From positions 62,001-126,000 of the IMG/VR virus record IMGVR_UViG_3300022868_000009: a DNA stretch of 64,000 bases, one strand, 5' to 3'. Positions within the stretch are counted from its first letter, which is position 1; each line of letters begins with the position of its first letter. A program made the position numbers and the translations under genes. Positions 2,867 through 59,400 of this stretch are shown one piece after another. The notes below the pieces were generated by a model. That model saw only the letters and a program-made list of their open reading frames with translations, did no database searches and was not told the DNA's origin.

Positions 2867-2875
2867 ATTGCAAAG

Positions 2876-4377: not shown

Positions 4378-4381
4378 ATTT

Positions 4382-5754: not shown

Positions 5755-5765
5755 AATTATTTTAT

Positions 5766-8164: not shown

Positions 8165-8165
8165 A

Positions 8166-9299: not shown

Positions 9300-9316
9300 T
9301 TAATTTTTAATTGTTT

Positions 9317-9922: not shown

Positions 9923-9924
9923 AA

Positions 9925-10578: not shown

Positions 10579-10619
10579 TTCATTTCATTTATTTTATTTC
10601 CCATTTAGAATGAGAATAT

Positions 10620-17722: not shown

Positions 17723-17813
17723 TTTTTGTCGATTATTTTAAAAATACTTTTTCTTTTTTATATATAATAAAAAATCAACATCCAGTTTGGAAAATCTATT
17801 TAATGAAAATGAT

Positions 17814-29968: not shown

Positions 29969-30550
29969 TTAACTATCATATACTTGTTGTGTATGTGAAT
30001 TCTTTGCACTATAAATATATTCGTGGTCATAAGTTGGATTTACTCCAAACCTTTTAAATGTTATATAAATATCTTCTAAACACTCCATATCAGCACCACC
30101 TACTAATGTAACATTTTTTCCAATTAATCTTCTTATTAATAATACAAGTTCATTATTAACAAAAAACCATTTATGATTATGTTTATCATTATAAATTATA
30201 TATGTATCTGTATCACCAATTTTAAATAATTTACCTGGTCCAAAATCTTTTTGTTGTTTAACAGTCTCTACGTGCTTTAAAAGTTCATCATCAAACCATT
30301 TATGTCCAAATCTTTTTGGAATATTTTCACTGTTTCCATTTTTATTTTTAAACGTATAAAGTGGTTTTAAAGGAACTTTATTAGTGTCATATATCTGATA
30401 AACTTGATTAAATTCTTTTGCATAATCTTGCAACTTTGATACAAATCCCTGTGGAATATGTTTTGAAAATTCCTGTTGAACATCAACAATCACTAAAATA
30501 TCATTATTTATAATTTGTGATTCTATTAAGTTACTAAACTTCTTTATCAT
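29969..30550 (-). CDS. Isochorismatase/cysteine hydrolase family protein (nicotinamidase-like fold)
   Basis: ILVIVDVQQEF, KWFF, VTLVGGADMECL (D/K/C triad pattern). Confidence 0.6.
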   Translation of the reverse strand: MIKKFSNLIESQIINNDILVIVDVQQEFSKHIPQGFVSKLQDYAKEFNQVYQIYDTNKVPLKPLYTFKNKNGNSENIPKRFGHKWFDDELLKHVETVKQQKDFGPGKLFKIGDTDTYIIYNDKHNHKWFFVNNELVLLIRRLIGKNVTLVGGADMECLEDIYITFKRFGVNPTYDHEYIYSAKNSHTQQVYDS

Positions 30551-30880: not shown

Positions 30881-31117
30881 ATGAAAAAACAAAAAACATT
30901 TACAATTGATATGGATATTTGGGAAAAATTTAATGAAATAAGCAAACAAAAATCTATCAATAAATCTTTATTAATAGAAAATCATTTAAGAGATATCATT
31001 TATTTAAACGAAAACCCAAAACATTTTATTATCGTTGGAGATGAAATAAAATTATTAAAATATTCATTAAATGAAAATGAAATTTATATATTAGACGCAA
31101 AACCAAATATAAAATAA
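30881..31117 (+). CDS. Ribbon-helix-helix DNA-binding protein upstream of endonuclease
   Basis: MKKQKTFTID...F...SKQKSINKSLLIE. Confidence 0.6.
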   Translation: MKKQKTFTIDMDIWEKFNEISKQKSINKSLLIENHLRDIIYLNENPKHFIIVGDEIKLLKYSLNENEIYILDAKPNIK

Positions 31118-32694
31118 TGATATTAACCAAATCAGTCAAAGTTAAAGTGCATTCATCTATGGTAAAATACTATCAGAGTAAAGGATATGAATGCAAATAT
31201 AAAGATATAATTGATATTAAAGTAAAAGATCTAAAACAAAAAAGTACAGTAATTGTCGAAGTTGAATGTGATATATGTGGTGAAAAGAAAAATATACCAT
31301 TGTTTAGATATAACAACAATTTTAATAATAAAAATATGTATGTTTGTTCAGCTTCTTGCGCACAAACAAAAATAAAATTAACTAAATTAGAAAATCATGG
31401 AGATGAAAATTTTTCAAATATTAAAAAACGAAAAGAAACATGCAAAGAAAGATACAACAACGAAAATTATAAGAATATTGAAAAAAAGAAAGAGACAAAT
31501 ATAGAAAGATATGGAGTTGAACACGTGATAATGAATGAAAATATAAAAAATAAAAGACTAGAAACATATAAAAAATTATATGGTGAAGAGCACCCAATGA
31601 AAAATAATGATATAATTCTAAAGAAAAAACAAACATCTAAAAATAAACATGGTGATAAAAATTATAACAACATACAAAAAACACTCAAAACAATTAAAAA
31701 TAAACAACTTCAAAATATTGAAAAATATAATATTAAAGCTATCAATTATCAAGATTTTCTTTTTGAAGTTGAATGTGATAAAGGACACAATTATAAAATA
31801 TCATTCGATTTATTATACAAAAGACATAAATATAATGTAGAAAAATGTACAATATGTAATCCTATTGGAATCAAATATTCAAATAGTGAGTATAATTTAT
31901 TACAATTCATTAAAGAAAATTATAATGGTGAAATAATAAAAAATTCAAGAAAAATAATAAAACCGTATGAATTAGACATATTTTTACCAAATTTAAATTT
32001 AGCATTTGAATATAATGGATTATGGTGGCACAATGAATTATATAAAGATAAAAATTATCACAAAACTAAAAGTGATTTATGTGATAAAAATAATATACAA
32101 TTAATACATATATGGGAAGATAACTGGATTTATAAACAAGATATAGTTAAATCTATGATATTAAATAAATTAGGTAAAACACTAAATAAAATATATGCAA
32201 GAAAATGTGAAATTAGAGAAATTAAAAATAATGATTTAATAAAACAATTTTTAAACAATAATCATATACAAGGTTTTGTTGGTTCGAGTGTAAAATTGGG
32301 TTTATATTACAATAATGAATTAACTTCTTTAATGACTTTTAAAAAAGATAATAATAATTTTGAATTAAACAGATTTTGTAATAAGTTAAATACTAATGTT
32401 ATTGGTGGTGCATCTAAATTATTTAAATACTTTACTAAAAATTATAACTTTTATGAAATAAAAACATTTGCAGATAGAACTTATTCAAATGGAAACTTAT
32501 ATTTTAAGATGAATTTTAAAATAGGTAAATTTATAAAACCAGATTATTATTATATTGTTAATGGTATTAGAAAACATAAATTTAATTTTAGAAAACAAAA
32601 AGATAACATAAAAACAGAACATGAAATTATGTTAGAAAAAAATATTTATAGAATATATGACGCAGGTAAATATAGATTTACCTACTCATTATAA
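31117..32694 (+). CDS. Free-standing putative homing endonuclease
   Basis: CDIC zinc motif, ERYGVE repeats, ELDIFLP..NLAFEYNGLWWH, IHIWED, conserved RIYDAG end. Confidence 0.8.
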   Translation: MILTKSVKVKVHSSMVKYYQSKGYECKYKDIIDIKVKDLKQKSTVIVEVECDICGEKKNIPLFRYNNNFNNKNMYVCSASCAQTKIKLTKLENHGDENFSNIKKRKETCKERYNNENYKNIEKKKETNIERYGVEHVIMNENIKNKRLETYKKLYGEEHPMKNNDIILKKKQTSKNKHGDKNYNNIQKTLKTIKNKQLQNIEKYNIKAINYQDFLFEVECDKGHNYKISFDLLYKRHKYNVEKCTICNPIGIKYSNSEYNLLQFIKENYNGEIIKNSRKIIKPYELDIFLPNLNLAFEYNGLWWHNELYKDKNYHKTKSDLCDKNNIQLIHIWEDNWIYKQDIVKSMILNKLGKTLNKIYARKCEIREIKNNDLIKQFLNNNHIQGFVGSSVKLGLYYNNELTSLMTFKKDNNNFELNRFCNKLNTNVIGGASKLFKYFTKNYNFYEIKTFADRTYSNGNLYFKMNFKIGKFIKPDYYYIVNGIRKHKFNFRKQKDNIKTEHEIMLEKNIYRIYDAGKYRFTYSL

Positions 32695-33579: not shown

Positions 33580-35226
33580 ATGTTATTAACAAAGAATATT
33601 AAAATTAAAATAAATAATAGGTATATAAAATATTATCAAAATCTTGGATATCAGGTAAAAGGCGGTCAAGAATGTGAAATAAAAATAGAAGATTTATCAA
33701 AAAAAAGCCACGCTTTTGTTGATGTTAAATGTGATATATGTCAAGAAGAAAAAACAATTAAATATTATAATTATACTGAAAATATACTAAATCAGGGTTT
33801 TTACACTTGTAAAAAATGTAAACATCATAAGACAAAAATCACAAATCTAGAGAAATATGGTGTAGAATGTACATTACAATCTGATGATGTTTTAGAAAAG
33901 ATAAAAAATAAAAACATAGAAAAATTTGGCACAGACCATTATTCAAAAACAAATGAATTTAAAGAAAAAATAAAAGAGACAAATCTAGAAAAATATGGTG
34001 TTGAAAGTAATATGCAATCAATCGAATTTAAGGAAAAATCTATATTATTTAATCTGAAAAGTTACGGTGTTGATCATTATTCAAAGACTAATGAATTTAA
34101 AGAAAAAGTAAAAAAAACAAATTTAGAAAAATATGGTGTTGATCATTATTCAAAAACTGATGAATTCAAGGAGAAGTTGTCTAAAAACCATTTTTTAAAA
34201 CTTAAAAAAGAAAACAACAATCTTAAAGAGATAAATGGTGATGAATATGTGATATATTGTGATAAATGTGATAAAGATTATACTATTCATAAATGGTTAT
34301 ATAAAAATAGAAAAAAGAAATATAAAACTAATACTTGTTTATATTGTAATCCTATAAATTCTTCTAAATCTGGAATGGAATTAAAATTATTAGAATTTAT
34401 AAAAGATAATTATAATGAAAAAATTGTTTATGGTAATAGAAAAATTATACCACCTAAAGAATTAGATATTTATTTACCAAATTTAAAATTGGCATTTGAG
34501 TTTAATGGTGTATATTGGCACAACGAATTAAACAAACATAACAAATATCATTTAGAAAAAACAGAAAAATGTCTAGAAAAAGGAATACAATTAATTCATG
34601 TTTTTGAAGATGATTGGATTTATAAACAAGATATAGTAAAATCTAGAATTTTGAATTTAATTGGAAAATCTAAAAAAATATTTGCTCGAAAATGTGAAAT
34701 TAAATTAGTCAATGATAATAAAGTTATTAGAAATTTTCTAGATGAAAATCATTTACAAGGGTTTGTAGGGAGCAAAATAAAATTGGGTTTGTATTATAAT
34801 GATGAATTAGTAAGTTTAATGACTTTTGGAAATTTGAGAAAACCTTTAAATCAGTCAAAAAAGGATGGGTCATTTGAATTATTAAGATTTTGTAATAAAT
34901 TGAGCATTTATGTTATTGGTGGTGCTTCAAAATTATTTAATTATTTCTTAAAAAACTATGAAATTTGTGAAATAATAAGTTATGCGGATAGAAGTTGGAG
35001 TAATGGAAATTTATATGAAAAACTTGGTTTTGAATTTATACATAAAACACAACCTAACTATTATTATATAATAGGCAATCTTAGAAAACATAGATTTAAT
35101 TTCAGGAAAGATAAATTAATTAAAGAAGGTTTTGATTCAAATAAAACCGAACATGAAATAATGTTAGAAAGGGAAATATATCGAATATATGATAGCGGTA
35201 GTTTAAAATATAGTTATTTAATATAA
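33580..35226 (+). CDS. Free-standing putative homing endonuclease (paralogue of 31117 and 38168)
   Basis: TNLEKYGV repeats; ELDIYLP..KLAFEFNGVYWH; RIYDSG. Confidence 0.8.
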   Translation: MLLTKNIKIKINNRYIKYYQNLGYQVKGGQECEIKIEDLSKKSHAFVDVKCDICQEEKTIKYYNYTENILNQGFYTCKKCKHHKTKITNLEKYGVECTLQSDDVLEKIKNKNIEKFGTDHYSKTNEFKEKIKETNLEKYGVESNMQSIEFKEKSILFNLKSYGVDHYSKTNEFKEKVKKTNLEKYGVDHYSKTDEFKEKLSKNHFLKLKKENNNLKEINGDEYVIYCDKCDKDYTIHKWLYKNRKKKYKTNTCLYCNPINSSKSGMELKLLEFIKDNYNEKIVYGNRKIIPPKELDIYLPNLKLAFEFNGVYWHNELNKHNKYHLEKTEKCLEKGIQLIHVFEDDWIYKQDIVKSRILNLIGKSKKIFARKCEIKLVNDNKVIRNFLDENHLQGFVGSKIKLGLYYNDELVSLMTFGNLRKPLNQSKKDGSFELLRFCNKLSIYVIGGASKLFNYFLKNYEICEIISYADRSWSNGNLYEKLGFEFIHKTQPNYYYIIGNLRKHRFNFRKDKLIKEGFDSNKTEHEIMLEREIYRIYDSGSLKYSYLI

Positions 35227-38167: not shown

Positions 38168-39979
38168 TTAATTCTTAAAAATGTATTTATAATTACCACT
38201 ATTATATATTCTATAAATACCTCTTTCTATCATTATTTGATGTTCACTTTTATCTAAATCAAAACCTTCTTTAACCAACACGTCTTTTCTATATCCAAAC
38301 CTATATTTTCTCACACCATCTACTACATAATAATAATTTGGTTTAGAAATATGAGATAATTCAAAACCTAAATTTTCATATAATTTGCCATTTGAATGTG
38401 ATCTATCTGCATAACTTATTATTTTTTTAAAAAAATAATTTTTAGTAAAATGTTTAAACAATTTTGAAGCACCACCAATAACATTAGTATTTAACTTATT
38501 ACAAAATCTTATAAGTTCAAATTCACCTTCTACACTAGAAGAATTTTGAGACTTTCTTTTTTTACCAAAAGTCATTAAAGAAACTAACTCATTTTCATAA
38601 TAAAGACCTAGTTTAATACTAGAACCAACAAAACCTTGTAAATGATTATCATCTAGAAATTTTCTTATCAATTTATTATCTTCAATAACTTTAATTTCAC
38701 ATTTTCTTGCATAAATTCTATTTGGTGTTTTACCTATTTTGTTTAATATTATGGATTTAACTATGTCTTGTTTATACAACCAATCATCTTCCCAAATATG
38801 TGTTAGCTGAACACCTTTTTTAAAACAATTATCTGTTTTATTTAAATGATAATTATTATCTTTATTTAATTCGTTATGCCAATACAAACCATTAAATTCA
38901 AAAGCTAATTTCAAATTTGGTAAATAAATATCTAATTCTAATGGTTTAATAACATCTCTATCTGATGTTTCAATGACACCAGTATAATTTTCTTCAATAA
39001 AACTTAATAATTGTATTTCTAATCCTGATGTGTGTTGATTAATTGGGTTGCAAATAGTACACAATTCAGTTTTACATTTAACTCTATTTGAAAACAAGGA
39101 TGAATTAATAATATAATCATGTCCTTTATCACATAATATTGTATATTCTTTATTATCAAAATCAATATTCAAAAAATTTAAATAACTATAATTACTTAAA
39201 AGATATTTTTTAGTTCTTTTTCTATTATTCTCTTTAATATTTTTTATAACTTTTTCTGTTTGAAAATAATTTTCAACACCATATCTTTCTAAGATTGTAG
39301 TTTTTCTTTTTTCTTTTAATTCATTAGAATATGATGGATTTTCAACACCATAATTTTCCATTAATGATTTTATTGATTTCTCTCTAATTTCTTCTGATTG
39401 TTGAGGATACTCTACACCATACTTTTCTAAATTTGTTTTTTTAATTTTATCTTTTATTTCTTCTGATTCAAACGGATTTTCAACACCATATTTTTCTAGA
39501 TTTGTTTTGGATATTTTATCACGTATCTCTTTATTAGATAGAGAAAATTCAACACCATACTTTTCTAGATTTGTTTGTTTTTGCTTTCTTTTTACACACT
39601 CATTTTGAGTAAAATGTTCGACACCATATTTTTCCAAACTTGTTTTTTTAACTCTATCAACATATTCCTCAGTCTGTGTATAATATTCACTGCCATATTT
39701 TTCAAATGTTGTCTTTTTAACTTTTTCTTGAGCACACTTAGAACTACAAGCATAAAACCCACCATTATTAATATTTTTAACATATTTTTGATACATTAAA
39801 TCCTTTTCATTATTACAAAAATCACATTTTACTTTTATTTTTACATGACTACCATCAGATAAATATTTAGGATGTATATTTAAAATATCTCCCAATTGTA
39901 CATCTTTCGAATATTCTTCTTTTAGTTTACTTAAATTTCTTTTTGTTACTTTAATTAATGTTTTTTCTGTTAAAATCAT
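38168..39979 (-). CDS. Free-standing putative homing endonuclease
   Basis: Many TNLEKYGVE repeats; ELDIYLP..KLAFEFNGLYWH; RIYNSG. Confidence 0.8.
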   Translation of the reverse strand: MILTEKTLIKVTKRNLSKLKEEYSKDVQLGDILNIHPKYLSDGSHVKIKVKCDFCNNEKDLMYQKYVKNINNGGFYACSSKCAQEKVKKTTFEKYGSEYYTQTEEYVDRVKKTSLEKYGVEHFTQNECVKRKQKQTNLEKYGVEFSLSNKEIRDKISKTNLEKYGVENPFESEEIKDKIKKTNLEKYGVEYPQQSEEIREKSIKSLMENYGVENPSYSNELKEKRKTTILERYGVENYFQTEKVIKNIKENNRKRTKKYLLSNYSYLNFLNIDFDNKEYTILCDKGHDYIINSSLFSNRVKCKTELCTICNPINQHTSGLEIQLLSFIEENYTGVIETSDRDVIKPLELDIYLPNLKLAFEFNGLYWHNELNKDNNYHLNKTDNCFKKGVQLTHIWEDDWLYKQDIVKSIILNKIGKTPNRIYARKCEIKVIEDNKLIRKFLDDNHLQGFVGSSIKLGLYYENELVSLMTFGKKRKSQNSSSVEGEFELIRFCNKLNTNVIGGASKLFKHFTKNYFFKKIISYADRSHSNGKLYENLGFELSHISKPNYYYVVDGVRKYRFGYRKDVLVKEGFDLDKSEHQIMIERGIYRIYNSGNYKYIFKN

Positions 39980-50119: not shown

Positions 50120-51050
50120 GTAAAATATAGTCTGTGCTTGGGCAGACGTTCATCTTCGGATGGAGCAGATAAAACATCGTAAGGTGTCGAAAGAGAGGAA
50201 GGTCACTTATTCTCGCCAATAGTCTTCGGATTATGGTCAATCTAAGCAAGTCTCATTTTTGTCTTGACCAACAAGACAGCCTCAATAGAAAGGGGATAAG
50301 ATGAAACAACGTGAGTAACGATCTTTGGTAAGAATAAGATGGCTCAATTGCCCGCAAGGGGAACAAAAGTTATCAAATATAGAATGGGGACATTCCAATA
50401 TCGTTTAATCCACTCATTAAGTGTTCGTTGATAGATAAGAGATAGAATAGTAGTTCGAATGTGGAAAGTTAGAGCATTATTCAGTTTCAAAGGTGTTGAA
50501 AGATGTCTTAACAAACGGCACAGTAAGTCCTCCGGGCTGAAACGCATACGAAGGGTCGTATTTTGTAAGGTGAAACTTATGAATCGGTGGACAGGCACTT
50601 TGTGGTGATATCATTTTTTATTAGCTCACAATGGTAGAGCAGTAGTATTCTAACTAAAGGTAGATGGTTCAATTCCATCATAAAAAAAGCAAAGTCCCTG
50701 TCCGTCTGTTAAGTAAAGGTGCTTAAAACTTTACACTTCGGTGAATAAAGTGGATTCAAAGCTCGCAAGGTAGAGAATCTTTGATACAGTAGCCTCAACT
50801 TTTAACCCTAGCAGGTTATTAACGCCACGATAGTGGTGAGTGTACGCAAAATATCGAGTAACTTAATAGTACTAGTGATGTAACCACATAAAAAGTTACA
50901 GTACAGCTGGTGTACATAGTTGCCTTTCGAGGGATTATGTGGACAATTCAGGAACGAAGAATAGCAACTCTTTGATAATCTGAAGAAAGCAAAACATATA
51001 ATAAACTGTGTGTTTTACCAGTATGACAGTTTTTAGTCTCAAAATTGTTT
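50120..51050 (+). ncRNA. Large ornate ncRNA, GOLLD-like (boundaries approximate)
   Basis: No credible ORF; GC-richer than flanks; UUCG/GCAA hairpins at 50151-50162, 50219-50234, 50351-50360, 50734-50743, 50923-50932; embedded tRNA-like element; terminal stem with AGUCUC loop at 51026-51048; next to tRNA genes. Confidence 0.6.
50615..50687 (+). pseudogene. tRNA-like element inside the large ncRNA (all-AU acceptor stem, 6-nt anticodon loop)
   Basis: TTTTTAT/ATAAAAA acceptor, GCTC/GAGC D-stem, GATGG-TTCAATT-CCATC T-arm. Confidence 0.75.
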
Positions 51051-51450
51051 CTCTATCAAGATAAAAACCTTGACGTGGTGATAGAGCTTTAAACTAATAT
51101 TTATCAAATGTGAAAAAAGTAGTAGAAATTAAAAGACGCAACACGCAGCCCGTTCTCTGCGCTACTTCACAAAAATGTGAACGATAAAAATCTTCACATT
51201 TAAATACACCAAGAATAACACCATCACTGTAGCCCTAAAGGAGTGATGTTGTCGCATAAAAACGATTAGTGTTAGTGTGTGTTTGAGAAGACGACGGGGG
51301 ATTTCACAAAAGTAACATGAATCAAGTAGTGTGAAATAAGAAATTCCTCCAAGTTTTCTCGGAAAATTTTTTTATGCAAGAAATAATTTGTATATTGTCA
51401 AAAATAGAGAATAAATATTTAATATATAAAAAATAGTAAAAACAGAAACA

Positions 51451-51537
51451 ATGAATAATACTTTTAAACATAATAGTTCATCTTTTCATAAGTGGTTTAG
51501 CCGCTTCGGATCGGGAATGTTATGCCTTAAAAGTTAA
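51451..51537 (+). CDS. Putative attenuator leader peptide 1 (MNNTFKHNSSSFHKWFSRFGSGMLCLKS)
   Basis: 28-codon ORF ~30 nt after TAATATATA motif; overlaps antiterminator strand; F/H/W codons match downstream tRNAs. Confidence 0.7.
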   Translation: MNNTFKHNSSSFHKWFSRFGSGMLCLKS

Positions 51538-51566
51538 GATTAAAAAATATTAATCAACAAAGGGAC

Positions 51567-51604
51567 AAACTCGATTCTAACAAGATTCGGGTTTTTTGTT
51601 TTTT
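51567..51604 (+). terminator. Intrinsic terminator upstream of tRNA-His/Trp/Phe (attenuator)
   Basis: AAACTCGATTCT-AACA-AGATTCGGGTTT then T-tract. Confidence 0.8.
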
Positions 51605-51626
51605 ATAAACGTTCTTAAAAATATAT

Positions 51627-51702
51627 GGTGGTTATAGTGTTAGTGGTAGCACGGCAGGTTGTGGTTCTGTTAGGATGGATTCAAATTCCATTAATCACCC
51701 CA
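51627..51702 (+). tRNA. tRNA-His(GTG), encoded G-1 and CCA
   Basis: Cloverleaf; GCAGG-TTGTGGT-TCTGT anticodon arm. Confidence 0.92.
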
Positions 51703-51712
51703 AATTTAACAC

Positions 51713-51783
51713 AGGTCTATAGTGTAACGGTAGCATAAGTGATTCCAAACCACTTGGTCCGGGTTCAAATCCTGGTAGGCCTG
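51713..51783 (+). tRNA. tRNA-Trp(CCA)
   Basis: AGGTCTA/TAGGCCT acceptor; TTCCAAA loop; CCGGG-TTCAAAT-CCTGG. Confidence 0.92.
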
Positions 51784-51852
51784 CGAGAAGTTTAAATATG
51801 GTTAAATGAAGGATGGTTAAAAGGTAGAAAAATGAAATATTAATACAAATTT

Positions 51853-51925
51853 GGAACCGTGGTGTAGGTGGTCTGCACGATACTCTGAAGAAGTATAGGT
51901 ACCCGTTCAACTCGGGTCGGTTCCA
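51853..51925 (+). tRNA. tRNA-Phe(GAA)
   Basis: GGAACCG/CGGTTCC acceptor; ATACT-CTGAAGA-AGTAT. Confidence 0.9.
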
Positions 51926-52002
51926 CTTTAAACTTTTAAATTTTAATATATATTAATGTGAAGAAAGAACCAGTTTTAATGAAAAATAATAAAAATTAAC
52001 AA

Positions 52003-52749
52003 ATGAAAAAATATACACAATTTAGTAAATCTTTAGAAAAAATCAATCAAAATATGGAATTATTTGAAAAAGCTATCGATCAAAATCAAAAAGAAAAAAT
52101 AGATAGATATATTAATGCAAACAATTACAAAAAAGTTCTATCAGAACTAAAACAAATTATTTTTAATTTAAAAAAAGAAATTAAAAATTCCAATTTTGAT
52201 GATTTCATTTATAAACAGAACAATAAAGATATAGAAATAATATATAATCCGACTATTCGTGGTATTTTAACCTATTTAGATGGTAAAAGAGTAGAATTTG
52301 AATATGGAAAAGAAGAGAATCAACAAAAAATCTTAAACACTATCTATATTGATGGTGAAAGAGACCCATTTTTAGATATAACTATTCAACCACCATTTAA
52401 TCAGATACATATTAATAATGGTTTGCCAGTTTTTATGAAAGGTCTAGGATTAGGTAAAAAAGTTTACAAAAAACTAATTAAAGATTTTGGTTATCTTTCT
52501 TCTTTTAAAGGAATAAAACCTTCTATTGAAAGTGATTTGGTTTGGGATACTTTAGCTGATGATAGAGAATTGTTCACTTTTGTGAATGATAACAATATCA
52601 TTTGTTTTTGGAATGAAGTAGATTATGATATTATAATTATTAAATTGAAAGAATTTTACAAAATAAAAGGACAAAAAATCTTTGATAACGATTTTAAAAA
52701 GTTATATAACTTAACTGATGAAAAAATAGAACAAATAATTAATATATAA
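52003..52749 (+). CDS. Hypothetical protein, possible GNAT-like motif
   Basis: MKGLGLGKKVY resembles acetyl-CoA-binding motif A. Confidence 0.5.
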   Translation: MKKYTQFSKSLEKINQNMELFEKAIDQNQKEKIDRYINANNYKKVLSELKQIIFNLKKEIKNSNFDDFIYKQNNKDIEIIYNPTIRGILTYLDGKRVEFEYGKEENQQKILNTIYIDGERDPFLDITIQPPFNQIHINNGLPVFMKGLGLGKKVYKKLIKDFGYLSSFKGIKPSIESDLVWDTLADDRELFTFVNDNNIICFWNEVDYDIIIIKLKEFYKIKGQKIFDNDFKKLYNLTDEKIEQIINI

Positions 52750-52767
52750 AGAAAATCAATTTTAAAC

Positions 52768-53016
52768 ATGAAAATTAAAAGATATAATGAATCATTAATT
52801 GATAATGATAATAACACTAGAGAAGATTTCAATGAAGAAATTGATGATCTAATATCAGAATTAAAGATAAGATATAATAATTTTAATAATTTAATTGATT
52901 CATACAAAATAATAGAAAAAAGTAAAACAGAAGAATGGGAAAAAGTTAGAAATGAACTAAGAGGCGCATTTGATGGTTTTAAAAATGAATTAATACAAAA
53001 AATTAAAAAATTTTAA
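52768..53016 (+). CDS. Hypothetical protein (MKIKRYNES tag)
   Basis: ORF after TAATATATA motif. Confidence 0.55.
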   Translation: MKIKRYNESLIDNDNNTREDFNEEIDDLISELKIRYNNFNNLIDSYKIIEKSKTEEWEKVRNELRGAFDGFKNELIQKIKKF

Positions 53017-53019
53017 ATA

Positions 53020-53094
53020 ATGATTATAATTAACATAAATAGTAAATCGAAAAAGAATAGTCGTCTGAAAACGGCTCGGAATTGTATTACCTAA
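53020..53094 (+). CDS. Putative attenuator leader peptide 2 (MIIININSKSKKNSRLKTARNCIT)
   Basis: 24-codon ORF; AGT AAA TCG AAA AAG AAT AGT cluster matches downstream Lys/Ser tRNAs; contains 1:2 hairpin and antiterminator strand. Confidence 0.7.
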   Translation: MIIININSKSKKNSRLKTARNCIT

Positions 53095-53116
53095 ATTTTT
53101 AGGTACAAAGAATTAC

Positions 53117-53146
53117 AAACCGAGTCTGAAAAGATTCGGTTTTTTT
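53117..53146 (+). terminator. Intrinsic terminator 2 nt before tRNA-Lys (attenuator)
   Basis: AAACCGAGTCT-GAAA-AGATTCGGTTT plus T-tract. Confidence 0.85.
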
Positions 53147-53148
53147 AT

Positions 53149-53226
53149 TGGCCATTAGCTCAGTAGGTTTAGAGCATCTGCCTTTTAAGCAGAGAGTCCA
53201 GGGTTCGATCCCCTGATGGCCAACCA
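53149..53226 (+). tRNA. tRNA-Lys(TTT) with encoded CCA
   Basis: TGGCCAT/ATGGCCA; TCTGC-CTTTTAA-GCAGA; CAGGG-TTCGATC-CCCTG. Confidence 0.95.
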
Positions 53227-53228
53227 AT

Positions 53229-53301
53229 GGATCTGTAGCTCAGTTGGTAGAGCTTCTGCCTTTTAAGCAGAAAGTCCAGGGTTCGAGTCCGACTAGGTCC
53301 A
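53229..53301 (+). tRNA. tRNA-Lys(TTT), second copy with mispaired T-stem
   Basis: GGATCTG/TAGGTCC; same anticodon arm; T-stem CAGGG/CCGAC pairs only 2 bp. Confidence 0.7.
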
Positions 53302-53305
53302 CTAA

Positions 53306-53420
53306 GGCTTATAACAAATAGGTTGTATTTATAGAGCATTTGTCGGGTTACCGCATGTCACTAAAATGTATATTTTAAGAGTTACTAGAGATATATGAGG
53401 TTCGAATCCTTAATAAGCCA
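53306..53420 (+). ncRNA. tRNA-like RNA (acceptor stem and T-arm intact, enlarged non-canonical centre)
   Basis: GGCTTAT/ATAAGCC-A; TGAGG-TTCGAAT-CCTTA; 115 nt. Confidence 0.65.
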
Positions 53421-53424
53421 CTAT

Positions 53425-53508
53425 GGAAAGCGTCCGGTTGGACGAGGGGCTACTCTTGAAAAGTAGTAATGGGTTACACCATTAGGGGTTCGAATCCCTT
53501 GCTTTCCG
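53425..53508 (+). tRNA. tRNA-Ser(TGA)
   Basis: CTACT-CTTGAAA-AGTAG; long variable arm; G discriminator. Confidence 0.93.
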
Positions 53509-53512
53509 CTAT

Positions 53513-53600
53513 GGAAGAGTACCCAAGTTGGTGAAGGGGCTGGTTTGCTAAACCAGTAGGTCTGAAATACGGCGCGTGGGTTCGAGCCCCACTTCTTCCG
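53513..53600 (+). tRNA. tRNA-Ser(GCT)
   Basis: CTGGT-TTGCTAA-ACCAG; long variable arm; G discriminator. Confidence 0.93.
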
Positions 53601-53648
53601 CAATTAGGTTTGAAACTCAGTTGGTGACCTACTAAGAAAGATATTTCA

Positions 53649-55340: not shown

Positions 55341-55625
55341 ATGCAAGATAAATGTAAAATATGTGGTCGTAATGAAACAACATCATTTCATCATTTAATA
55401 CCAGTAACATTACATACTAAAAAGTGGTTCAAAAAAAATTACGAAAAAGACTATATGAAATCACACGGTATAGACTTATGCAAACAATGTCATAAGGCTA
55501 TACATAAATTTTGGGATGAAAAAACTTTGGGCAAAAAATTTAATACATTAAAAAGTTTATTAGAAAATCAAAAAATTAAAAAACACATTGAATGGGTTAT
55601 AAAACTAAAACATAATAAAAAATGA
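55341..55625 (+). CDS. Small HNH-like protein
   Basis: CKICGR...FHHLIP...LCKQCHKAIH. Confidence 0.7.
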   Translation: MQDKCKICGRNETTSFHHLIPVTLHTKKWFKKNYEKDYMKSHGIDLCKQCHKAIHKFWDEKTLGKKFNTLKSLLENQKIKKHIEWVIKLKHNKK

Positions 55626-55903
55626 CAAAAGACAAAACTAAAGACGAATCTAAAAACGAATCTAAAGAAAAAGAAGAAAATTTATACTCAATTATTGTAT
55701 ATAATGACGAAGTTAATACATTTGAACATGTTATTGGTTGTCTTATTAAATACTGTAAACATGAATTAACACAAGCAGAACAATGTACCATGATTATACA
55801 CAATAATGGTAAATGTGATGTTAAAAAAGGCACATTTAAAGAATTAGAAACTCCTTATTATGCTTTACTTGATTCTGGGTTATCTGCTGAAATTGAAAAT
55901 TAA
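55622..55903 (+). CDS. clpS: ClpS N-degron adaptor (Bacteroidota type)
   Basis: IIVYNDEVNTFEHVI..L...C.H...QAEQC..IIH.NGKCDVK.G. Confidence 0.88.
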   Translation: MTKDKTKDESKNESKEKEENLYSIIVYNDEVNTFEHVIGCLIKYCKHELTQAEQCTMIIHNNGKCDVKKGTFKELETPYYALLDSGLSAEIEN

Positions 55904-55985
55904 ATATATGTCTAATAACATATCCTAATTTTTGACTTATTAGAAAATTTCTCGTATATTATTATAAATACTAAAACTTCAAATC

Positions 55986-57293
55986 ATGAGAAATATACAA
56001 AAATTATCAGAAAAAGAATTAATAGTACATTTAAAATCTATCTATAATAAACAGATAGATATTTATGATAAATTTGAAAAAACAGGTGAAATTGAACCAA
56101 TTATTACCGATTTTGATGATCAAGATGCATATAAATATTTTATGCAATATGCAATCTTTAAAACTCACCCAAACGCAATAGTAAAATTTAAATTTTTTAA
56201 CCGTGGAAAACATAAATTTCCAGTCGGTTCAGATTATCATATTAAAAAACAAATAGAATCTATGAAAAATCTTAGATTCACTCCTGAAATAGAAAGATCA
56301 TTTAGAAAAAAATTTTCAAATATGAAAGGTGAATCTTATTTTGATGAATCTTTTTATGGTTTTTTAAGAAGTTATAGATACGATCCATCTGAAGTTAAAG
56401 TAACTCAAACAGGAGAAGATATCGAAATAGAAATAACTGGTTCTTGGTTAAAAACAATTTATTGGGAAACACAAATAATGCCGATTTTAACAGAAACTTG
56501 GTATATGTTAACTGATCAATATAAAAATATTCATAATTTTGATCATCTATATGATACACACAGAGACAAATATCGAAGTTTTATAACAGCCGAATCTAAT
56601 ATTGCAGAATTTGGTTTAAGAAGAAGATATTCAAAACTAATACAAGAATTTATCAATATACATTTTATGTGGGAATCACCAGCTAGATATATTGGTACGT
56701 CTAATTGTATGTTCGCTAGAAAATTTAATGTTAAAGCCATTGGAACACAAGCTCATGAATGGATAATGTTTCATGCCGCAAAATATGGACCAGAACTAGC
56801 AAATAAGATATCTTTAGAAAATTGGGTTAAAGTTTACAGAGGAGAATTAGGTATTGCGTTATCTGATACTTATGGTACAGACAATTTCTTAAAATCATTT
56901 GATACTTTACATAGTAAATTATTTGATGGTGTTAGATGGGATTCTGGTGATTTTAAATTATTTACTGATAAAATAATTGGACACTATAAATCATATGGAA
57001 TTAATCCTAAATCCAAAACAATTGTCTATTCTGATGGTATAAATTCATTTTTAAAAATACGAGATATTATAAGATATGCAAGTGATAAAATTAAATGCAC
57101 GTTAGGAATTGGTACTTATTTAACAAATGATATTGGTGTACCAACTATGAATATTGTTATTAAAATGACAGAAGCTAAACCTGAAAAAATGGATTGGAGA
57201 TATTGTATAAAGACATCTGATTCATCTGGTAAATATACTTATACTGACAAAAAAACATTAAACAGATACTTAGAAGATTTGAATATAAATTAA
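55986..57293 (+). CDS. pncB: Nicotinate phosphoribosyltransferase
   Basis: DAYKYFMQ, EFGLRRR, GTSN, GTQAHEW, ALSDTYG, GVRWDSGD, YSDG, GIGTYLTND, NIVIKM. Confidence 0.92.
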   Translation: MRNIQKLSEKELIVHLKSIYNKQIDIYDKFEKTGEIEPIITDFDDQDAYKYFMQYAIFKTHPNAIVKFKFFNRGKHKFPVGSDYHIKKQIESMKNLRFTPEIERSFRKKFSNMKGESYFDESFYGFLRSYRYDPSEVKVTQTGEDIEIEITGSWLKTIYWETQIMPILTETWYMLTDQYKNIHNFDHLYDTHRDKYRSFITAESNIAEFGLRRRYSKLIQEFINIHFMWESPARYIGTSNCMFARKFNVKAIGTQAHEWIMFHAAKYGPELANKISLENWVKVYRGELGIALSDTYGTDNFLKSFDTLHSKLFDGVRWDSGDFKLFTDKIIGHYKSYGINPKSKTIVYSDGINSFLKIRDIIRYASDKIKCTLGIGTYLTNDIGVPTMNIVIKMTEAKPEKMDWRYCIKTSDSSGKYTYTDKKTLNRYLEDLNIN

Positions 57294-57338
57294 ACTAGAT
57301 AAGAATATAATAATAAAAATAAAAAATAATATAATATT

Positions 57339-57584
57339 ATGGTAAAAAAACAATACATGGGTAAAACAGTGAAAGAACATTTCGGTTATAAAATAAAACA
57401 CATGATTCAATTCAGAATGTCAAGAGGACCCAAAGGAAAAGAAATATCTCATCAAGAACCTAGCGGATATTTTGGTGTATATGCAGGCAAAAATCTATTG
57501 TGTGGAAATAAAGAATTCAAAAAAGTAAAAGATGCAGAACAATTTTTATTCAATTATATTAAAAATAAGAAATATGAAATTTAA
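57339..57584 (+). CDS. Hypothetical protein
   Basis: 81 aa basic ORF in operon. Confidence 0.55.
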   Translation: MVKKQYMGKTVKEHFGYKIKHMIQFRMSRGPKGKEISHQEPSGYFGVYAGKNLLCGNKEFKKVKDAEQFLFNYIKNKKYEI

Positions 57585-58131
57585 CAACAGACCAAATAAA
57601 TCAATAAAAAATGATGGTACAACACATTGGATTTCAAGAAGTTGTGCTGTTGTTTCCTATGTATCAGCAAAAATCGGGAGTGATTTTTATATTTTAGTAG
57701 GACAAAGAGGACAAGGCACACCAGACTGTAAAGGTTTGTGGAATTTACCTTGTGGTTATCTAGATTGGAATGAAAGTGGTAGAGAAGCTTTCTTTAGAGA
57801 AATGTGGGAAGAAACTGGTATAAATTGCGAAAAACTTCTAAAAAATTACAAAATTTTTATAAATACAGAAGAACCTTGGTATATTGATACTAATCCAGAC
57901 TCACATCTTCAAAATATTTCATTACATTATTCAATTGTATTTGATGCAACTAATTCTATATTACCAGAATTCAGTACAGAAAATAGTGAACCTGATGAAG
58001 TTGAAAATTTAATGTGGATTAAGATTAAAGACGCTCATAAACTGCATTTTGGTTTTGATCATAAAAAAAGGGTAAAAGTCTTCAACGAAAAATTTATAAT
58101 ACCATTAGAAAATTCTCTTAAAATATCTTAA
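57574..58131 (+). CDS. Nudix hydrolase (ADP-ribose pyrophosphatase-like)
   Basis: WNLPCGYLDWNESGREAFFREMWEETG Nudix box; FGFDH. Confidence 0.88.
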   Translation: MKFNNRPNKSIKNDGTTHWISRSCAVVSYVSAKIGSDFYILVGQRGQGTPDCKGLWNLPCGYLDWNESGREAFFREMWEETGINCEKLLKNYKIFINTEEPWYIDTNPDSHLQNISLHYSIVFDATNSILPEFSTENSEPDEVENLMWIKIKDAHKLHFGFDHKKRVKVFNEKFIIPLENSLKIS

Positions 58132-58219
58132 TAATTGACATATGTTATATAACATACCAAAAAATATTACAATTATAAAAATTTTTCGTATATTTAATTA
58201 AACAATAAAAAATATAATT

Positions 58220-59083
58220 ATGAAAAATATAATAAATTACGACAAAGTACTTGAAAATTCAAGATTTTTACTAAAAGAAAAAATTACAAGAACTAAACTT
58301 AAATCATTAGTATTGGGTATTAGTGGTGGAGTTGATTCAGCAATTGTTGCAGCAATTGCTAAACCTATATGTGATGAATTAAATATTCCTTTAATAGGAA
58401 GATATATTCATATAGAAAGTAATAAGAAAGAAGAAAAAGAAAGAGCTGAAGATATTGGAAAAGCGTTTTGCACTGATTTCCAATCAATTGATCTTACAGA
58501 ATACTTTGATACATTAAAAAATCTAGATGAAATGGATAATGAAGGTTCTCCTTATTCTGAATATGATTATCAATCAAAATTAATTAGACTTGGTAATATA
58601 AAAGCTAGAACAAGAATGATTTATCTTTATAATTTAGCTTCAAAAAATGGTGGTTTAGTATTAGGTACAGACAATTTAACTGAATATTATTTGGGATTTT
58701 GGACTTTGCACGGTGATGTTGGTGATTTTGGTTTAATTCAAAATCTTTGGAAGTCTGAAGTACATGAATTAACATTACATTTAGCTAAAAGTTTAAATGA
58801 AAAAGGTAAAGTGTTAGTTGATTGTGCAATGGCAAATGCTACTGATGGTCTTGGAATAAGTGAGACTGATCTAGAACAAATTATGCCAGATTGGAAAGAA
58901 AGACATAATACAACTGCAAGTGGTTATTCAGAAATTGATAAAAAATTACAATCTTATTTAAAAGATATTAGTAAAGGAGAAAACATTTCAAAATATAATA
59001 ATGATCCAGTAATTGAAAGACATAGATCATCTTTCTTCAAAAGAATAAACCCAGAAAGTATAGATAGAGAAGAATTAATTTAA
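58220..59083 (+). CDS. nadE: NH3-dependent NAD+ synthetase
   Basis: LGISGGVDSA, GNIKARTRM, GTDNLTE..LGFWTLHGD, KSEV, TDGL. Confidence 0.92.
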   Translation: MKNIINYDKVLENSRFLLKEKITRTKLKSLVLGISGGVDSAIVAAIAKPICDELNIPLIGRYIHIESNKKEEKERAEDIGKAFCTDFQSIDLTEYFDTLKNLDEMDNEGSPYSEYDYQSKLIRLGNIKARTRMIYLYNLASKNGGLVLGTDNLTEYYLGFWTLHGDVGDFGLIQNLWKSEVHELTLHLAKSLNEKGKVLVDCAMANATDGLGISETDLEQIMPDWKERHNTTASGYSEIDKKLQSYLKDISKGENISKYNNDPVIERHRSSFFKRINPESIDREELI

Positions 59084-59129: not shown

Positions 59130-59369
59130 ATGCCAAAAAGTAGAAATAAAAAAAATCAAAAGAAAAGATCTCAAGCAAGAACACAAAGAATTAAAAATCA
59201 ACAAGTAAAAGCCAAAAAAGAACTAATAGAATTATTCCAAAAAGCCCAAGAAGAATCTTTACAAGAAAAAGCTAAACAAACTGAAGCAGACGCAAACGTA
59301 GTTGTAGAAGATTTAGATATAGGTGATAACTTAGAACTTGAAATTGATGAAGAAGAAATAAAAGAATAA
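59130..59369 (+). CDS. Hypothetical protein (basic N-terminus, acidic C-terminus)
   Basis: MPKSRNKK... ORF followed by terminator. Confidence 0.6.
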   Translation: MPKSRNKKNQKKRSQARTQRIKNQQVKAKKELIELFQKAQEESLQEKAKQTEADANVVVEDLDIGDNLELEIDEEEIKE

Positions 59370-59374
59370 AAAAG

Positions 59375-59400
59375 AAAAACCACTCAATGAGTGGTTTTTT
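59375..59400. terminator. Bidirectional intrinsic terminator
   Basis: AAAAACCACTC-AAT-GAGTGGTTTTT. Confidence 0.85.

What the first reader, a model, noticed from the sequence alone, without database searches (positions are those of the whole stretch)
55986..59083. Preiss-Handler-type NAD+ rebuilding kit (PncB, Nudix, NadE), distinct from NARP1/NARP2
Seen in sequence: adjacent pncB, Nudix and nadE, plus a cysteine-hydrolase (PncA-fold) gene at 29969-30550. Established: NAD-depleting defences (Thoeris, DSR, SIR2-type) leave ADP-ribose and nicotinamide, and the described phage pathways use Adps/Namat or Nampt/Nmnat. Inference: a deamidating route from nicotinamide to nicotinate, NaMN, NaAD and NAD, with the Nudix recycling ADP-ribose toward PRPP. 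No adenylyltransferase (NadD/NadM) or PRPP synthetase is in this window.
Basis: partly seen in the sequence, partly recalled or inferred. Interest (0 to 1): 0.6.

Follow-up and report, generated by a model that had tools for sequence, protein, structure and literature searches.

The report
Huge phage's nicotinamide-to-NAD salvage genes
A very large salt-lake phage carries intact genes for the four-step nicotinamide-to-NAD+ route. Two of those steps plus a Nudix hydrolase sit together here. This kind of pathway has already been described in jumbo phages, so the finding is real but mostly not new.

Summary
Window 55986-57293 is PncB, 57574-58131 is a Nudix hydrolase with an intact catalytic box, and 58220-59083 is an ammonia-type NadE. 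A conserved 81-aa ORF lies between PncB and the Nudix.

The window is part of a 344.6-kb virus record, about 434 kb once a sibling contig is added. It comes from salt-lake and marine metagenomes, and the host is probably a Bacteroidota.

The two missing steps lie elsewhere in the same genome. A nicotinamidase with the full Pnc1-type residue set is at G000:C1:26795-27586, and NadD is at C1:198541-199443. No Prs, Nampt, PnuC, PncC or SIR2 was found.

It lacks the nicotinamidase metal site and has no NAD context.

Li et al. 2024 ("NAD-jumbo phages") already describe Preiss-Handler clusters in jumbo phages and propose counter-defence. This is therefore a new member of a known kind, and the role is still untested.

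One detail is new. An 18-bp palindrome, ATATGT-N6-ACATAT, occurs at four places in 434 kb. All four are upstream of pncA, pncB and nadE, which suggests a phage NAD regulon. The phage also encodes a truncated NAD-dependent ligase, so plain cofactor supply is an equally good role.

The parts
55622..55903 (+). ClpS-like adaptor gene directly upstream of the module. It is syntenic in the relative L016, and no functional link to NAD is known.
   Evidence: PF02617 at 5.7e-18. ClpS also lies directly upstream of PncB in L016.
55906..55923 (.). Palindrome ATATGT-N6-ACATAT, the candidate operator of pncB. It starts 80 nt before the ATG.
   Evidence: It is the only exact full match in the 344.6-kb genome. 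All four core sites (TATGT-N6-ACATA) lie upstream of NAD genes.
55932..55960 (+). Promoter-like element TTGACT-17-TATATT. It is shared in register with the nadE upstream region.
   Evidence: Best-scoring match of the scan at 10 of 12, but such matches are not enriched in this AT-rich DNA.
55986..57293 (+). pncB, nicotinate phosphoribosyltransferase (nicotinate + PRPP to NaMN).
   Evidence: PF17767 plus PF04095. TIGR01514 scores 317 bits against a cut-off of 269.6. It is the only NAPRTase-family gene in the genome.
57339..57584 (+). orf81, a conserved small protein of unknown function between pncB and the Nudix. Its end overlaps the Nudix start by 11 nt.
   Evidence: 47% identical to the syntenic 75-aa ORF of L016. 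No family and no word-search homologue. The Atlas returns only viral hypothetical proteins.
57574..58131 (+). Nudix hydrolase with an intact catalytic box. Best guess is an ADP-ribose or related NDP-X pyrophosphatase.
   Evidence: PF00293. The 185-aa form is the one in databases. Model pLDDT is 89. The top fold match is the NrtR Nudix domain bound to ADPR (3gz8), with NadM-Nudix also high. The listed full-length profile alignments are to NrtR chains 3gz8 and 2fml.
58140..58157 (.). Second palindrome, with a perfect 16-bp core TATGTTATATAACATA. Candidate operator of nadE, starting 80 nt before the ATG.
   Evidence: It sits at the same distance and in the same register as the pncB site.
58166..58194 (+). 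Promoter-like element ATTACA-17-TATATT upstream of nadE.
58220..59083 (+). nadE, ammonia-dependent NAD+ synthetase (NaAD to NAD+).
   Evidence: PF02540 at 4.2e-34. TIGR00552 scores 121.5 against a cut-off of 63.65. The SGGVDS motif is visible.
59130..59369 (+). orf79, a highly charged small ORF downstream of nadE, probably co-transcribed. Function unknown.
   Evidence: ORF list and sequence. No family above cut-off.
59374..59400 (.). Bidirectional intrinsic-terminator-like hairpin that closes the unit.
   Evidence: 12 pairs followed by a T run, detected on both strands.
29969..30550 (-). Its substrate is unknown and it is probably not part of the pathway.
   Evidence: No Pfam or NCBIfam hit. 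VIA Z 8-10 to nicotinamidases and isochorismatases. Invariant D23/K79/C157. No palindrome upstream and no NAD genes beside its relatives.

Best explanation
The window holds steps 2 and 4 of a phage-encoded deamidating NAD+ salvage route, together with a Nudix hydrolase and a conserved small ORF.

The predicted chemistry is as follows:
1. Nicotinamide is deamidated to nicotinate by PncA (elsewhere in the genome, G000:C1:26795-27586).
2. Nicotinate plus PRPP gives NaMN, by PncB (window 55986-57293).
3. NaMN plus ATP gives NaAD, by NadD (elsewhere, C1:198541-199443).
4. NaAD plus ATP plus NH3 gives NAD+, by NadE (window 58220-59083).

PRPP must come from the host, because no phage Prs was found.

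The Nudix is probably co-transcribed with pncB and is catalytically intact. It most likely cleaves ADP-ribose or a related nucleoside-diphosphate-X compound. That would remove the other NAD+ breakdown product and yield ribose-5-phosphate and AMP.

pncA, pncB-orf81-nudix and nadE each sit behind the same 18-bp palindrome. They probably form one regulon under an unidentified DNA-binding protein.

The purpose is to keep NAD+ high in the infected cell. It may supply the phage's own NAD-dependent ligase and sugar-nucleotide enzymes, offset NAD+ loss (including NADase defences), or do both.

Shown here: gene identities, catalytic motifs, genome-wide completeness, synteny, and the restricted distribution of the palindrome.
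Inferred: all enzyme activities, the Nudix substrate, the regulation, and the biological role.
For: - Enzyme identities. PncB, NadE and NadD score above curated equivalog cut-offs.
- PncA: its alignment to yeast Pnc1 conserves the catalytic Asp, Lys and Cys and the Asp/His/His metal ligands.
- Motifs read directly: NadD carries GGAFNPITKGH and ISST..R. NadE carries SGGVDS. PncB carries GTQAHEW; that this is the PncB active-site motif is my recollection, not a tool result.
- Synteny: the module is conserved in L016. Other layouts are pncA-pncB-nadE(-Nudix) in human-faecal phage scaffolds, pncB-nadE..pncA in the 735-kb phage LR756501, and nadE-pncB-MutT-NMNAT in the cultured Sinorhizobium phage Phosso.
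- Nudix: intact box. The fold is nearest the NrtR Nudix domain with ADPR, and NadM-Nudix is also high.
- Palindrome: four core sites in 434 kb, all upstream of pncA (two sites), pncB and nadE, where 1.7 would be expected anywhere in the genome by chance. The pncB and nadE upstream regions align without gaps over 93 nt.
- NAD+ consumers in the same genome: a LigA-like ligase and an NAD-dependent epimerase.
- Literature: Li et al. 2024 (PMC11662467) report the same pathway class in 174 jumbo phages.
Against: - No activity of any of these proteins has been measured, here or for any phage Preiss-Handler enzyme in the papers found.
- PncA scores below the NCBIfam cut-off (50.8 against 174).
- nadD has no palindrome upstream and lies 78 kb away.
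- The palindrome is absent from every relative examined, including the nearest one, L016, where the genes are packed with no intergenic space. No conservation supports it.
- Sigma-70-like promoter matches are not enriched in this AT-rich DNA.
- The Nudix is nearly as close to RppH and RenU in fold and to MutT-type enzymes in sequence. Its bacterial homologues have no NAD context.
- The genome is only about half complete by CheckV, so absences are provisional.
Confidence: 0.8

Rival explanations
1. The kit was selected specifically as a counter-defence. After Thoeris, DSR, SIR2-type or similar NADases cut NAD+ into ADPR and nicotinamide, the phage converts the nicotinamide back to NAD+ through the four-step route, while the Nudix clears ADPR. 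This is the reader's reading, and it is a more specific version of the main explanation.
For: - The entry point is nicotinamide or nicotinate, not NMN. PncA is present, and PncC, Nampt and PnuC are absent.
- A Nudix with ADPR-type fold neighbours sits inside the cluster.
- NARP1-3 show that phages do rebuild NAD+ against such defences.
- Li et al. propose the same role for jumbo phages.
- A dedicated operator would fit an inducible response.
Against: - It is untested for any Preiss-Handler phage kit.
- The route needs four enzymes, PRPP and several ATP, so it is slower and costlier than the two-step NARP1 and NARP2 routes.
- The phage has its own NAD+ consumer, a ligase, which explains NAD+ synthesis without invoking any defence.
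- The host and its defences are unknown.
Confidence: 0.35
2. The kit is plain cofactor supply. A huge phage with a long infection cycle tops up NAD+ for its own NAD-dependent DNA ligase and NAD-binding sugar-nucleotide enzymes, complementing a host that salvages niacin poorly. No defence is involved.
For: - A truncated LigA-like ligase of 416 aa, with adenylation and OB domains, is at G000:C1:46521-47771.
- An NAD-dependent epimerase/dehydratase sits in a polysaccharide cluster in the window.
- CoaD and CoaE for coenzyme A lie close to the ligase gene, which points to general cofactor provisioning.
- Li et al. report a ligase in 90 of 174 NAD-jumbo phages, and pathway complementarity with hosts.
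Against: - Ligase turns NAD+ into NMN and AMP, yet no PncC or dedicated NMN route was found.
- Epimerases keep NAD+ bound and do not consume it.
- Plain supply does not explain the Nudix in the cluster.
Confidence: 0.4
3. The Nudix is not an ADP-ribose enzyme and is not functionally part of the NAD route. It could be an RppH-like RNA pyrophosphohydrolase, an NAD-cap decapping enzyme, or a housecleaning (d)NTP pyrophosphatase that merely shares the operon.
For: - RppH and RenU rank just behind NrtR in fold.
- The best NCBIfam and PDB sequence matches are RppH, MutT, NudJ and NUDT15 types, all far below cut-offs.
- Bacterial homologues stand alone with no NAD genes nearby.
- The phage has three other Nudix genes, one with weak YffH/AdpP (ADPR pyrophosphatase) similarity.
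Against: - The Nudix position inside the NAD cluster is conserved in L016. Nudix genes also lie near pncB or nadE in L010, Phosso and Atu_ph07.
- NrtR chains align over the whole domain, whereas most other matches cover only the Nudix-box region.
- NadM-Nudix is the most sequence-identical of the top fold hits at 25%.
Confidence: 0.4
4. The palindromes are not operators. They may be leftovers of a duplicated promoter cassette or of recombination or insertion events that brought the genes in, or simply chance in AT-rich DNA.
For: - They are absent from all relatives examined.
- The pncB and nadE upstream regions look like copies of one 93-nt cassette.
- The core pattern is expected about 1.7 times per genome by chance.
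Against: - All four core sites fall in roughly 600 nt upstream of three NAD genes out of 434 kb.
- The pncA sites lie 91 kb away and were found only after the motif had been defined from pncB and nadE. The rest of the pncA upstream region aligns only with a gap.
- Distances to the ATG are 79-80 nt at all three genes.
Confidence: 0.3

Closest known systems
NAD-jumbo phages with Preiss-Handler clusters (Li et al., Microbiome 2024, PMC11662467; for example Kuafu_71 with pncB-nadD-nadE)
   Same: - Genome above 200 kb.
- A complete phage-encoded route from niacin to NAD+.
- An NAD-dependent ligase in the same genome.
- A Bacteroidota host is suspected.
- The same counter-defence hypothesis.
- Salt ponds and lakes are listed among the habitats.
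   Different: - Here nadD and pncA are dispersed, 78 and 91 kb away, instead of clustered.
- A Nudix and a conserved small ORF sit inside the cluster.
- The genes share a palindromic upstream site. Term searches and the sections of that paper read here returned no mention of a Nudix, and none of regulatory sites in the parts read.
- The phage comes from salt-lake and marine samples, not from a gut.
Bacterial NrtR-controlled salvage I regulons (Rodionov et al. 2008, PMC2330246): Blastopirellula '#pncB-nrtR-pncA; #nadE' and Pseudomonas 'nrtR-nadD<#>pncA-pncB-nadE'
   Same: - The same four enzymes.
- A Nudix-family gene embedded next to pncB.
- Separate palindromic sites in front of the pncB unit and of nadE.
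- The phage Nudix is closest in fold to the NrtR Nudix domain bound to ADPR.
   Different: - The phage Nudix has no winged-helix DNA-binding domain: it is 185 aa and ends in a single helix.
- It keeps an intact catalytic box.
- The phage palindrome is an even 18-mer with core GT-N6-AC. NrtR boxes are 21-bp with GT-N7-AC.
- It also differs from NadR (TGTTTA-N6-TAAACA) and from NiaR (TGT-N4-ACA, or ACA-N5-TGT).
NARP1 (Adps + Namat), NARP2 (Nampt + Nmnat) and NARP3 (PnuC + NadR-like)
   Same: All are phage-encoded rebuilding of NAD+. NARP2 also starts from nicotinamide.
   Different: - None of their parts was found: no Prs-like Adps, no second NAPRTase-family gene, no PnuC.
- The route here is deamidating and has four steps, with NadE as its hallmark.
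- NARP1-3 have experimental proof. This route has none.
Sinorhizobium phage Phosso and Agrobacterium phage Atu_ph07 (cultured jumbo phages)
   Same: Phosso carries nadE, pncB, a MutT-like Nudix, an NMN adenylyltransferase and a hydrolase within 6 kb. Atu_ph07 carries pncB about 3 kb from an annotated ADP-ribose pyrophosphatase.
   Different: PncB identity is only about 30%. Gene order, hosts (Alphaproteobacteria) and GC content differ. The palindrome was not looked for in these two records.

Membership tests
Deamidating NAD+ salvage (PncA-PncB-NadD-NadE; Preiss-Handler plus nicotinamidase) | Nicotinate phosphoribosyltransferase (PncB type) | tested here: met
   TIGR01514 scores 317 bits against a cut-off of 269.55, and PF17767 plus PF04095 are present.
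Deamidating NAD+ salvage (PncA-PncB-NadD-NadE; Preiss-Handler plus nicotinamidase) | NaMN adenylyltransferase (NadD) | tested here: met
   It is not in the window but is in the same genome at G000:C1:198541-199443. TIGR00482 scores 117.7 against a cut-off of 112.45. The GGAFNPITKGH and ISST..R motifs are present.
Deamidating NAD+ salvage (PncA-PncB-NadD-NadE; Preiss-Handler plus nicotinamidase) | NAD+ synthetase (NadE) | tested here: met
   TIGR00552 scores 121.5 against a cut-off of 63.65, and the SGGVDS P-loop is present.
Deamidating NAD+ salvage (PncA-PncB-NadD-NadE; Preiss-Handler plus nicotinamidase) | Nicotinamidase with an Asp-Lys-Cys triad and an Asp/His/His metal site | tested here: met
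   P0005 (G000:C1:26795-27586) aligns with yeast Pnc1 (2h0r) at 2.6e-11 with all six residues in place. However, the NCBIfam nicotinamidase model NF008623 scores only 50.8 bits against a cut-off of 174.
Deamidating NAD+ salvage (PncA-PncB-NadD-NadE; Preiss-Handler plus nicotinamidase) | Measured conversion of nicotinamide or nicotinate to NAD+ | not testable with these tools
   This needs enzyme assays.
NAD-jumbo phage (Li et al. 2024) | Phage genome above 200 kb with at least one complete NAD+ synthesis pathway | tested here: met
   The virus record is 344,634 bp, or about 434 kb with the sibling contig G001. All four steps were found.
NARP1 | PRPP-synthetase-like Adps together with Namat | tested here: not met
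   PF13793 has no match in G000 or G001. The single NAPRTase-family gene is PncB-type.
NARP2 | Nampt together with an NMN adenylyltransferase | tested here: not met
   There is no second PF04095 gene. The only NAD-type adenylyltransferase is NadD. The other PF01467 hit is CoaD.
NARP3 | PnuC transporter together with a NadR-like kinase/adenylyltransferase | tested here: not met
   PF04973 has no match in G000 or G001. The control search detected the family in only 4 of 14 control genomes, and the genome is incomplete.
ADP-ribose pyrophosphatase (Nudix) | Intact Nudix box | tested here: met
   The box reads GYLDWNESGREAFFREMWEETGI, and the REx2EE residues are invariant in the family.
ADP-ribose pyrophosphatase (Nudix) | Features specific for ADPR as substrate | tested here: inconclusive
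   The top fold hit is the NrtR Nudix domain with ADPR, and NadM-Nudix is high, but RppH and RenU score similarly. Sequence matches are all far below cut-offs. From my own recollection, ADPRases are said to carry a proline about 15-16 residues after the box; here it is at +18 (read).
NrtR transcription factor | C-terminal winged-helix DNA-binding domain after the Nudix domain | tested here: not met
   The protein is 185 aa and the model ends in one helix, residues 163-184. The NCBIfam NrtR model scores only 20.6 bits against a cut-off of 400.
Nicotinamidase, as claimed for window 29969-30550 | Isochorismatase-like fold with an Asp-Lys-Cys triad | tested here: met
   VIA Z is 8-10 to 47 family members, then falls to about 6. 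D23, K79 and C157 are invariant.
Nicotinamidase, as claimed for window 29969-30550 | Asp/His/His metal site and a sequence-model match | tested here: not met
   No Pfam or NCBIfam hit and no PDB sequence hit. The alignment shows no DxH or WPxHC motif. There is no palindrome upstream and no NAD genes beside its relatives.

The most novel reading that the evidence does not exclude
The phage runs its own NAD regulon. A so far unidentified regulator binds the ATATGT-N6-ACATAT operators in front of pncA, pncB-orf81-nudix and nadE. It switches the salvage route on when NAD+ falls or when ADPR or nicotinamide rises. The regulator could involve the NrtR-like Nudix together with the conserved orf81, or a hijacked host factor. 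That would be an inducible, metabolite-sensing counter-measure to NAD+ depletion rather than a constitutive one.
Probability: 0.15. Interest if true: 0.65.

Novelty: new member of a known kind. Interest (0 to 1): 0.35.

Why it matters
NAD+ depletion is a common bacterial way of stopping phages. Three phage rebuilding routes (NARP1-3) have been proven. The four-step deamidating route has so far only been predicted in jumbo phages.

This locus is a clean, apparently intact example from a non-gut habitat. It adds two testable features: a Nudix embedded in the cluster, and a shared palindrome that may co-regulate three of the four pathway genes.

If the palindrome is an operator, it would be a rare case of a phage carrying a metabolic regulon of its own. 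If the kit rescues phages from NADase defences, it would be a fourth NAD+ reconstitution route. If neither holds, it remains an ordinary auxiliary metabolic module of a huge phage.

Tried and rejected
- **Palindrome in relatives.** I searched L008-L011, L014 and L015 and the nearest relative L016. It was not found, so there is no phylogenetic footprint.
- **Reads.** The four runs laid gave contigs identical to the window, plus low-similarity pieces mostly over nadE. No listed holder is on record as RNA. That leaves no footprinting, expression or start-site information.
- **orf81.** No family. The word search finds only itself. The Atlas gives only viral hypotheticals at scores below 0.9.
- **Test of orf81 binding the Nudix.** There is no result either way.
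- **Other regulator candidates.** A 1-mismatch palindrome lies upstream of a 156-aa ORF at C1:338126-338596, but that ORF and its neighbours have no Pfam family. None of the three other Nudix proteins is NrtR-like.
- **PncB relatives by pattern scan.** Only the sibling contig turned up in viral contigs, and one 31%-identical Ruminococcus MAG in genomes. No donor lineage can be inferred.
- **Alternative genetic code.** This was prompted by a tRNA with anticodon CTA. Reading TAG or TGA as sense hardly lengthens the ORFs, so code 11 was kept.
- **The 37-75-nt DNA matches** are AT-rich low-complexity sequence at the nadE start. I dismissed them.
- **The TCGTATAT motif** occurs only 12 times in the genome, so it is not a general phage promoter.
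- **Sigma-70 promoter scan.** Matches are not enriched over shuffles, so promoter calls are tentative.
- **The large representative-protein search** was not used. No claim here rests on the absence of relatives.

Full report
**What the sequence is.** The window is G000:C1:62001-126000 of a 344,634-bp IMG/VR virus record that CheckV rates 48% complete. GC content is about 24%. There is a cluster of eight tRNA genes. The only distant DNA matches are to the huge phages LR756500 and LR756501. A sibling contig, IMGVR_UViG_3300023257_000007 (G001, 348,222 bp), is identical over the PncB match. Shared features lie at a constant offset of 85,475 bases, and G001 runs about 89 kb beyond the end of G000. 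About 434 kb of the genome is therefore known.

Public runs labelled salt lake, and one labelled marine, hold the locus. In the four runs laid, contigs with no differences bridge all the gene junctions. No listed holder is on record as RNA. A protein with a type-IX-secretion sorting domain (window 22091-23020) points to a Bacteroidota host. The lack of Shine-Dalgarno sequences before pncB and nadE fits that; that Bacteroidota make little use of Shine-Dalgarno sequences is my own knowledge. This host call is a hint, not a finding.

**The observation.** Window 55986-57293 is a PncB-type nicotinate phosphoribosyltransferase. TIGR01514 scores 317 bits against a cut-off of 269.6, and both NAPRTase domains are present. 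Window 58220-59083 is an ammonia-type NAD+ synthetase. TIGR00552 scores 121.5 against 63.65, SGGVDS is present, and there is no glutaminase domain.

Between them lies a Nudix hydrolase. Databases hold the 185-aa form that starts at 57574. Its Nudix box is intact, and the catalytic Arg and Glu residues are invariant among 16 homologues. An 81-aa ORF (57339-57584) precedes the Nudix and is a real gene: its syntenic counterpart in a diverged relative is 47% identical.

**Not a chance neighbourhood.** An ENA metagenome contig (L016) keeps the order ClpS-PncB-small ORF-Nudix-(61-aa ORF)-NadE, at 38%, 47%, 61% and 46% identity. Other layouts recur:
- Human-faecal phage scaffolds carry pncA-pncB-nadE, one of them with a related Nudix 2 kb further on.
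- The 735-kb phage LR756501 carries pncB-nadE and a pncA-like gene within 8 kb.
- The cultured Sinorhizobium phage Phosso is annotated nadE-pncB-MutT-NMN adenylyltransferase-hydrolase.
- Atu_ph07 has an annotated ADP-ribose pyrophosphatase about 3 kb from pncB.

**The rest of the pathway.** The genome does have NadD at C1:198541-199443 (TIGR00482, 117.7 bits against 112.45). It also has a nicotinamidase at C1:26795-27586. That protein misses the NCBIfam cut-off, but it aligns with yeast Pnc1 with the catalytic Asp, Lys and Cys and all three metal ligands in place. All four steps from nicotinamide to NAD+ are therefore encoded.

Searches of G000 and G001 found no Prs, no second NAPRTase-family gene (so no Nampt or Namat), no PnuC, no PncC and no SIR2. 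Because the genome is incomplete, these absences are provisional.

Window 29969-30550 has no family hit. Its model (pLDDT 85.7) matches nicotinamidases and other isochorismatase-like cysteine hydrolases at Z 8-10, with unrelated folds at about 6. D23, K79 and C157 are invariant in 28 homologues. It lacks the nicotinamidase metal motif, has no palindrome upstream, and its relatives sit among unrelated phage genes. I take it for a phage-specific cysteine hydrolase of unknown substrate, not the pathway's PncA.

**The Nudix.** The model is confident (pLDDT 89). Foldseek ranks the NrtR Nudix domain bound to ADP-ribose first. The bifunctional NadM-Nudix ADPR pyrophosphatase is also high and, at 25%, is the most sequence-identical of the top hits. 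RppH and RenU are close behind. In a profile search of the PDB, the full-length alignments listed are to NrtR chains, whereas most other matches cover only the box region. Bacterial members of the family stand alone in their genomes. An ADP-ribose or related substrate is the best guess, at roughly even odds. The protein has no DNA-binding domain, so it is not an NrtR.

**A shared palindrome.** The upstream regions of pncB and nadE align without gaps over 93 nt. Each begins with ATATGT-N6-ACATAT, 80 nt before the ATG, followed by a promoter-like TTGACT/ATTACA-17-TATATT.

I then searched the whole genome. The core TATGT-N6-ACATA occurs four times, and the other two copies are 79 and 179 nt upstream of pncA, 91 kb away. 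Simulated sequence gives 1.7 core sites per genome anywhere. All four observed sites fall in about 600 nt upstream of NAD genes. The extra 89 kb of G001 adds no good site. nadD, orf81, the Nudix and the 29969-30550 gene have none.

The spacing differs from the published boxes of NadR, NrtR and NiaR. The site is absent from all relatives checked, so its function rests on this one genome. I read it as a candidate operator for three units: pncA, pncB-orf81-nudix, and nadE-orf79. The last ends at a bidirectional terminator at 59374-59400. The layout recalls bacterial NrtR regulons such as '#pncB-nrtR-pncA; #nadE'.

**What it is for.** The phage encodes a truncated NAD-dependent DNA ligase (416 aa, adenylation plus OB domains), lying within a few kb of CoaD and CoaE. 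It also encodes an NAD-dependent epimerase in a polysaccharide cluster. Cofactor supply for the phage's own enzymes therefore explains the kit as well as counter-defence does. The nicotinamide entry point and the embedded Nudix lean slightly towards recycling NAD+ breakdown products.

**What is known.** NARP1 and NARP2 (Osterman et al.) and NARP3 (PnuC plus NadR-like, PMC13464706) are experimentally shown, and none uses PncB or NadE. Li et al. 2024 (PMC11662467) report 174 'NAD-jumbo phages' with complete salvage or Preiss-Handler routes. These include pncB-nadD-nadE clusters, Bacteroidota hosts, ligase co-occurrence, occurrence in lakes and salt ponds, and the counter-defence hypothesis, all by bioinformatics. 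I found no experimental test of the deamidating route in phages.

**Verdict.** The finding is a real, well-preserved new member of a known kind. The added value is the completed pathway map, the correction of the PncA assignment, and the candidate regulon. The test of orf81 binding the Nudix could not be run.

Noticed in passing
window 55906-55923 and 58140-58157; G000:C1:27665-27682 and 27765-27782: An 18-bp palindrome, ATATGT-N6-ACATAT, has its only four core copies in 434 kb upstream of pncB, nadE and pncA (two copies). It is a candidate phage NAD operator and is unlike the published NadR, NrtR and NiaR boxes.
   Followed up: yes
window 50614-50688, within the tRNA cluster at 50614-53601: ARAGORN calls a tRNA with anticodon CTA, which would read TAG, among eight tRNA genes. 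Reading TAG or TGA as sense barely lengthens the ORFs, so there is no sign of a recoded genome.
   Followed up: partly
window 22091-23020 (-): This protein has a laminin-G-like domain and a type-IX-secretion C-terminal sorting domain (Por_Secre_tail). That is a hint of a Bacteroidota host.
   Followed up: no
G000:C1:46521-47771 (-), outside the window: A truncated NAD-dependent DNA ligase of 416 aa with adenylation and OB domains only. CoaD (C1:44590-45627), CoaE (C1:43962-44621) and another Nudix (233 aa) lie nearby. This is a second cofactor-related neighbourhood.
   Followed up: partly
window 180-17400 (-): A long same-strand run of genes that looks like a sugar-nucleotide or polysaccharide biosynthesis cluster. 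Only two were scanned: a HAD-nucleotidyltransferase fusion at 180-1532 and an NAD-dependent epimerase/dehydratase at 8166-9299.
   Followed up: no
window 31117-32694, 33580-35226 and 38168-39979: Three paralogous large proteins carrying DUF7487.
   Followed up: no
window 27073-28122 (+): A phage-encoded sensor histidine kinase with HisKA and HATPase_c domains. No response regulator was looked for.
   Followed up: no
window 29969-30550 (-): It founds a phage-borne family of at least 30 members with an isochorismatase-like fold, an invariant Asp-Lys-Cys and no Pfam model. The substrate is unknown. One relative lies 6 kb from a Prs-like gene (L030).
   Followed up: partly
L014 (MT839920.1) 674-1834: The pncB homologue in this human-faecal phage scaffold is split by one in-frame stop between 1621 and 1625. 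This could be a sequencing error, a pseudogene or a recoded stop.
   Followed up: no
L008 (LR756501.1, 735-kb phage), locus 9938-18411: tblastn finds pncB, nadE and a pncA-like gene here. Li et al. 2024 credit this phage only with nadD.
   Followed up: partly
window 55341-55903: An HlpB-like (HNH-nuclease-like) small protein and ClpS lie directly upstream of pncB. ClpS is syntenic in L016.
   Followed up: no
G000:C1:27788-28702 and C1:159044-160111: Two Dam-family adenine methyltransferases. One sits directly upstream of the pncA operator region.
   Followed up: no
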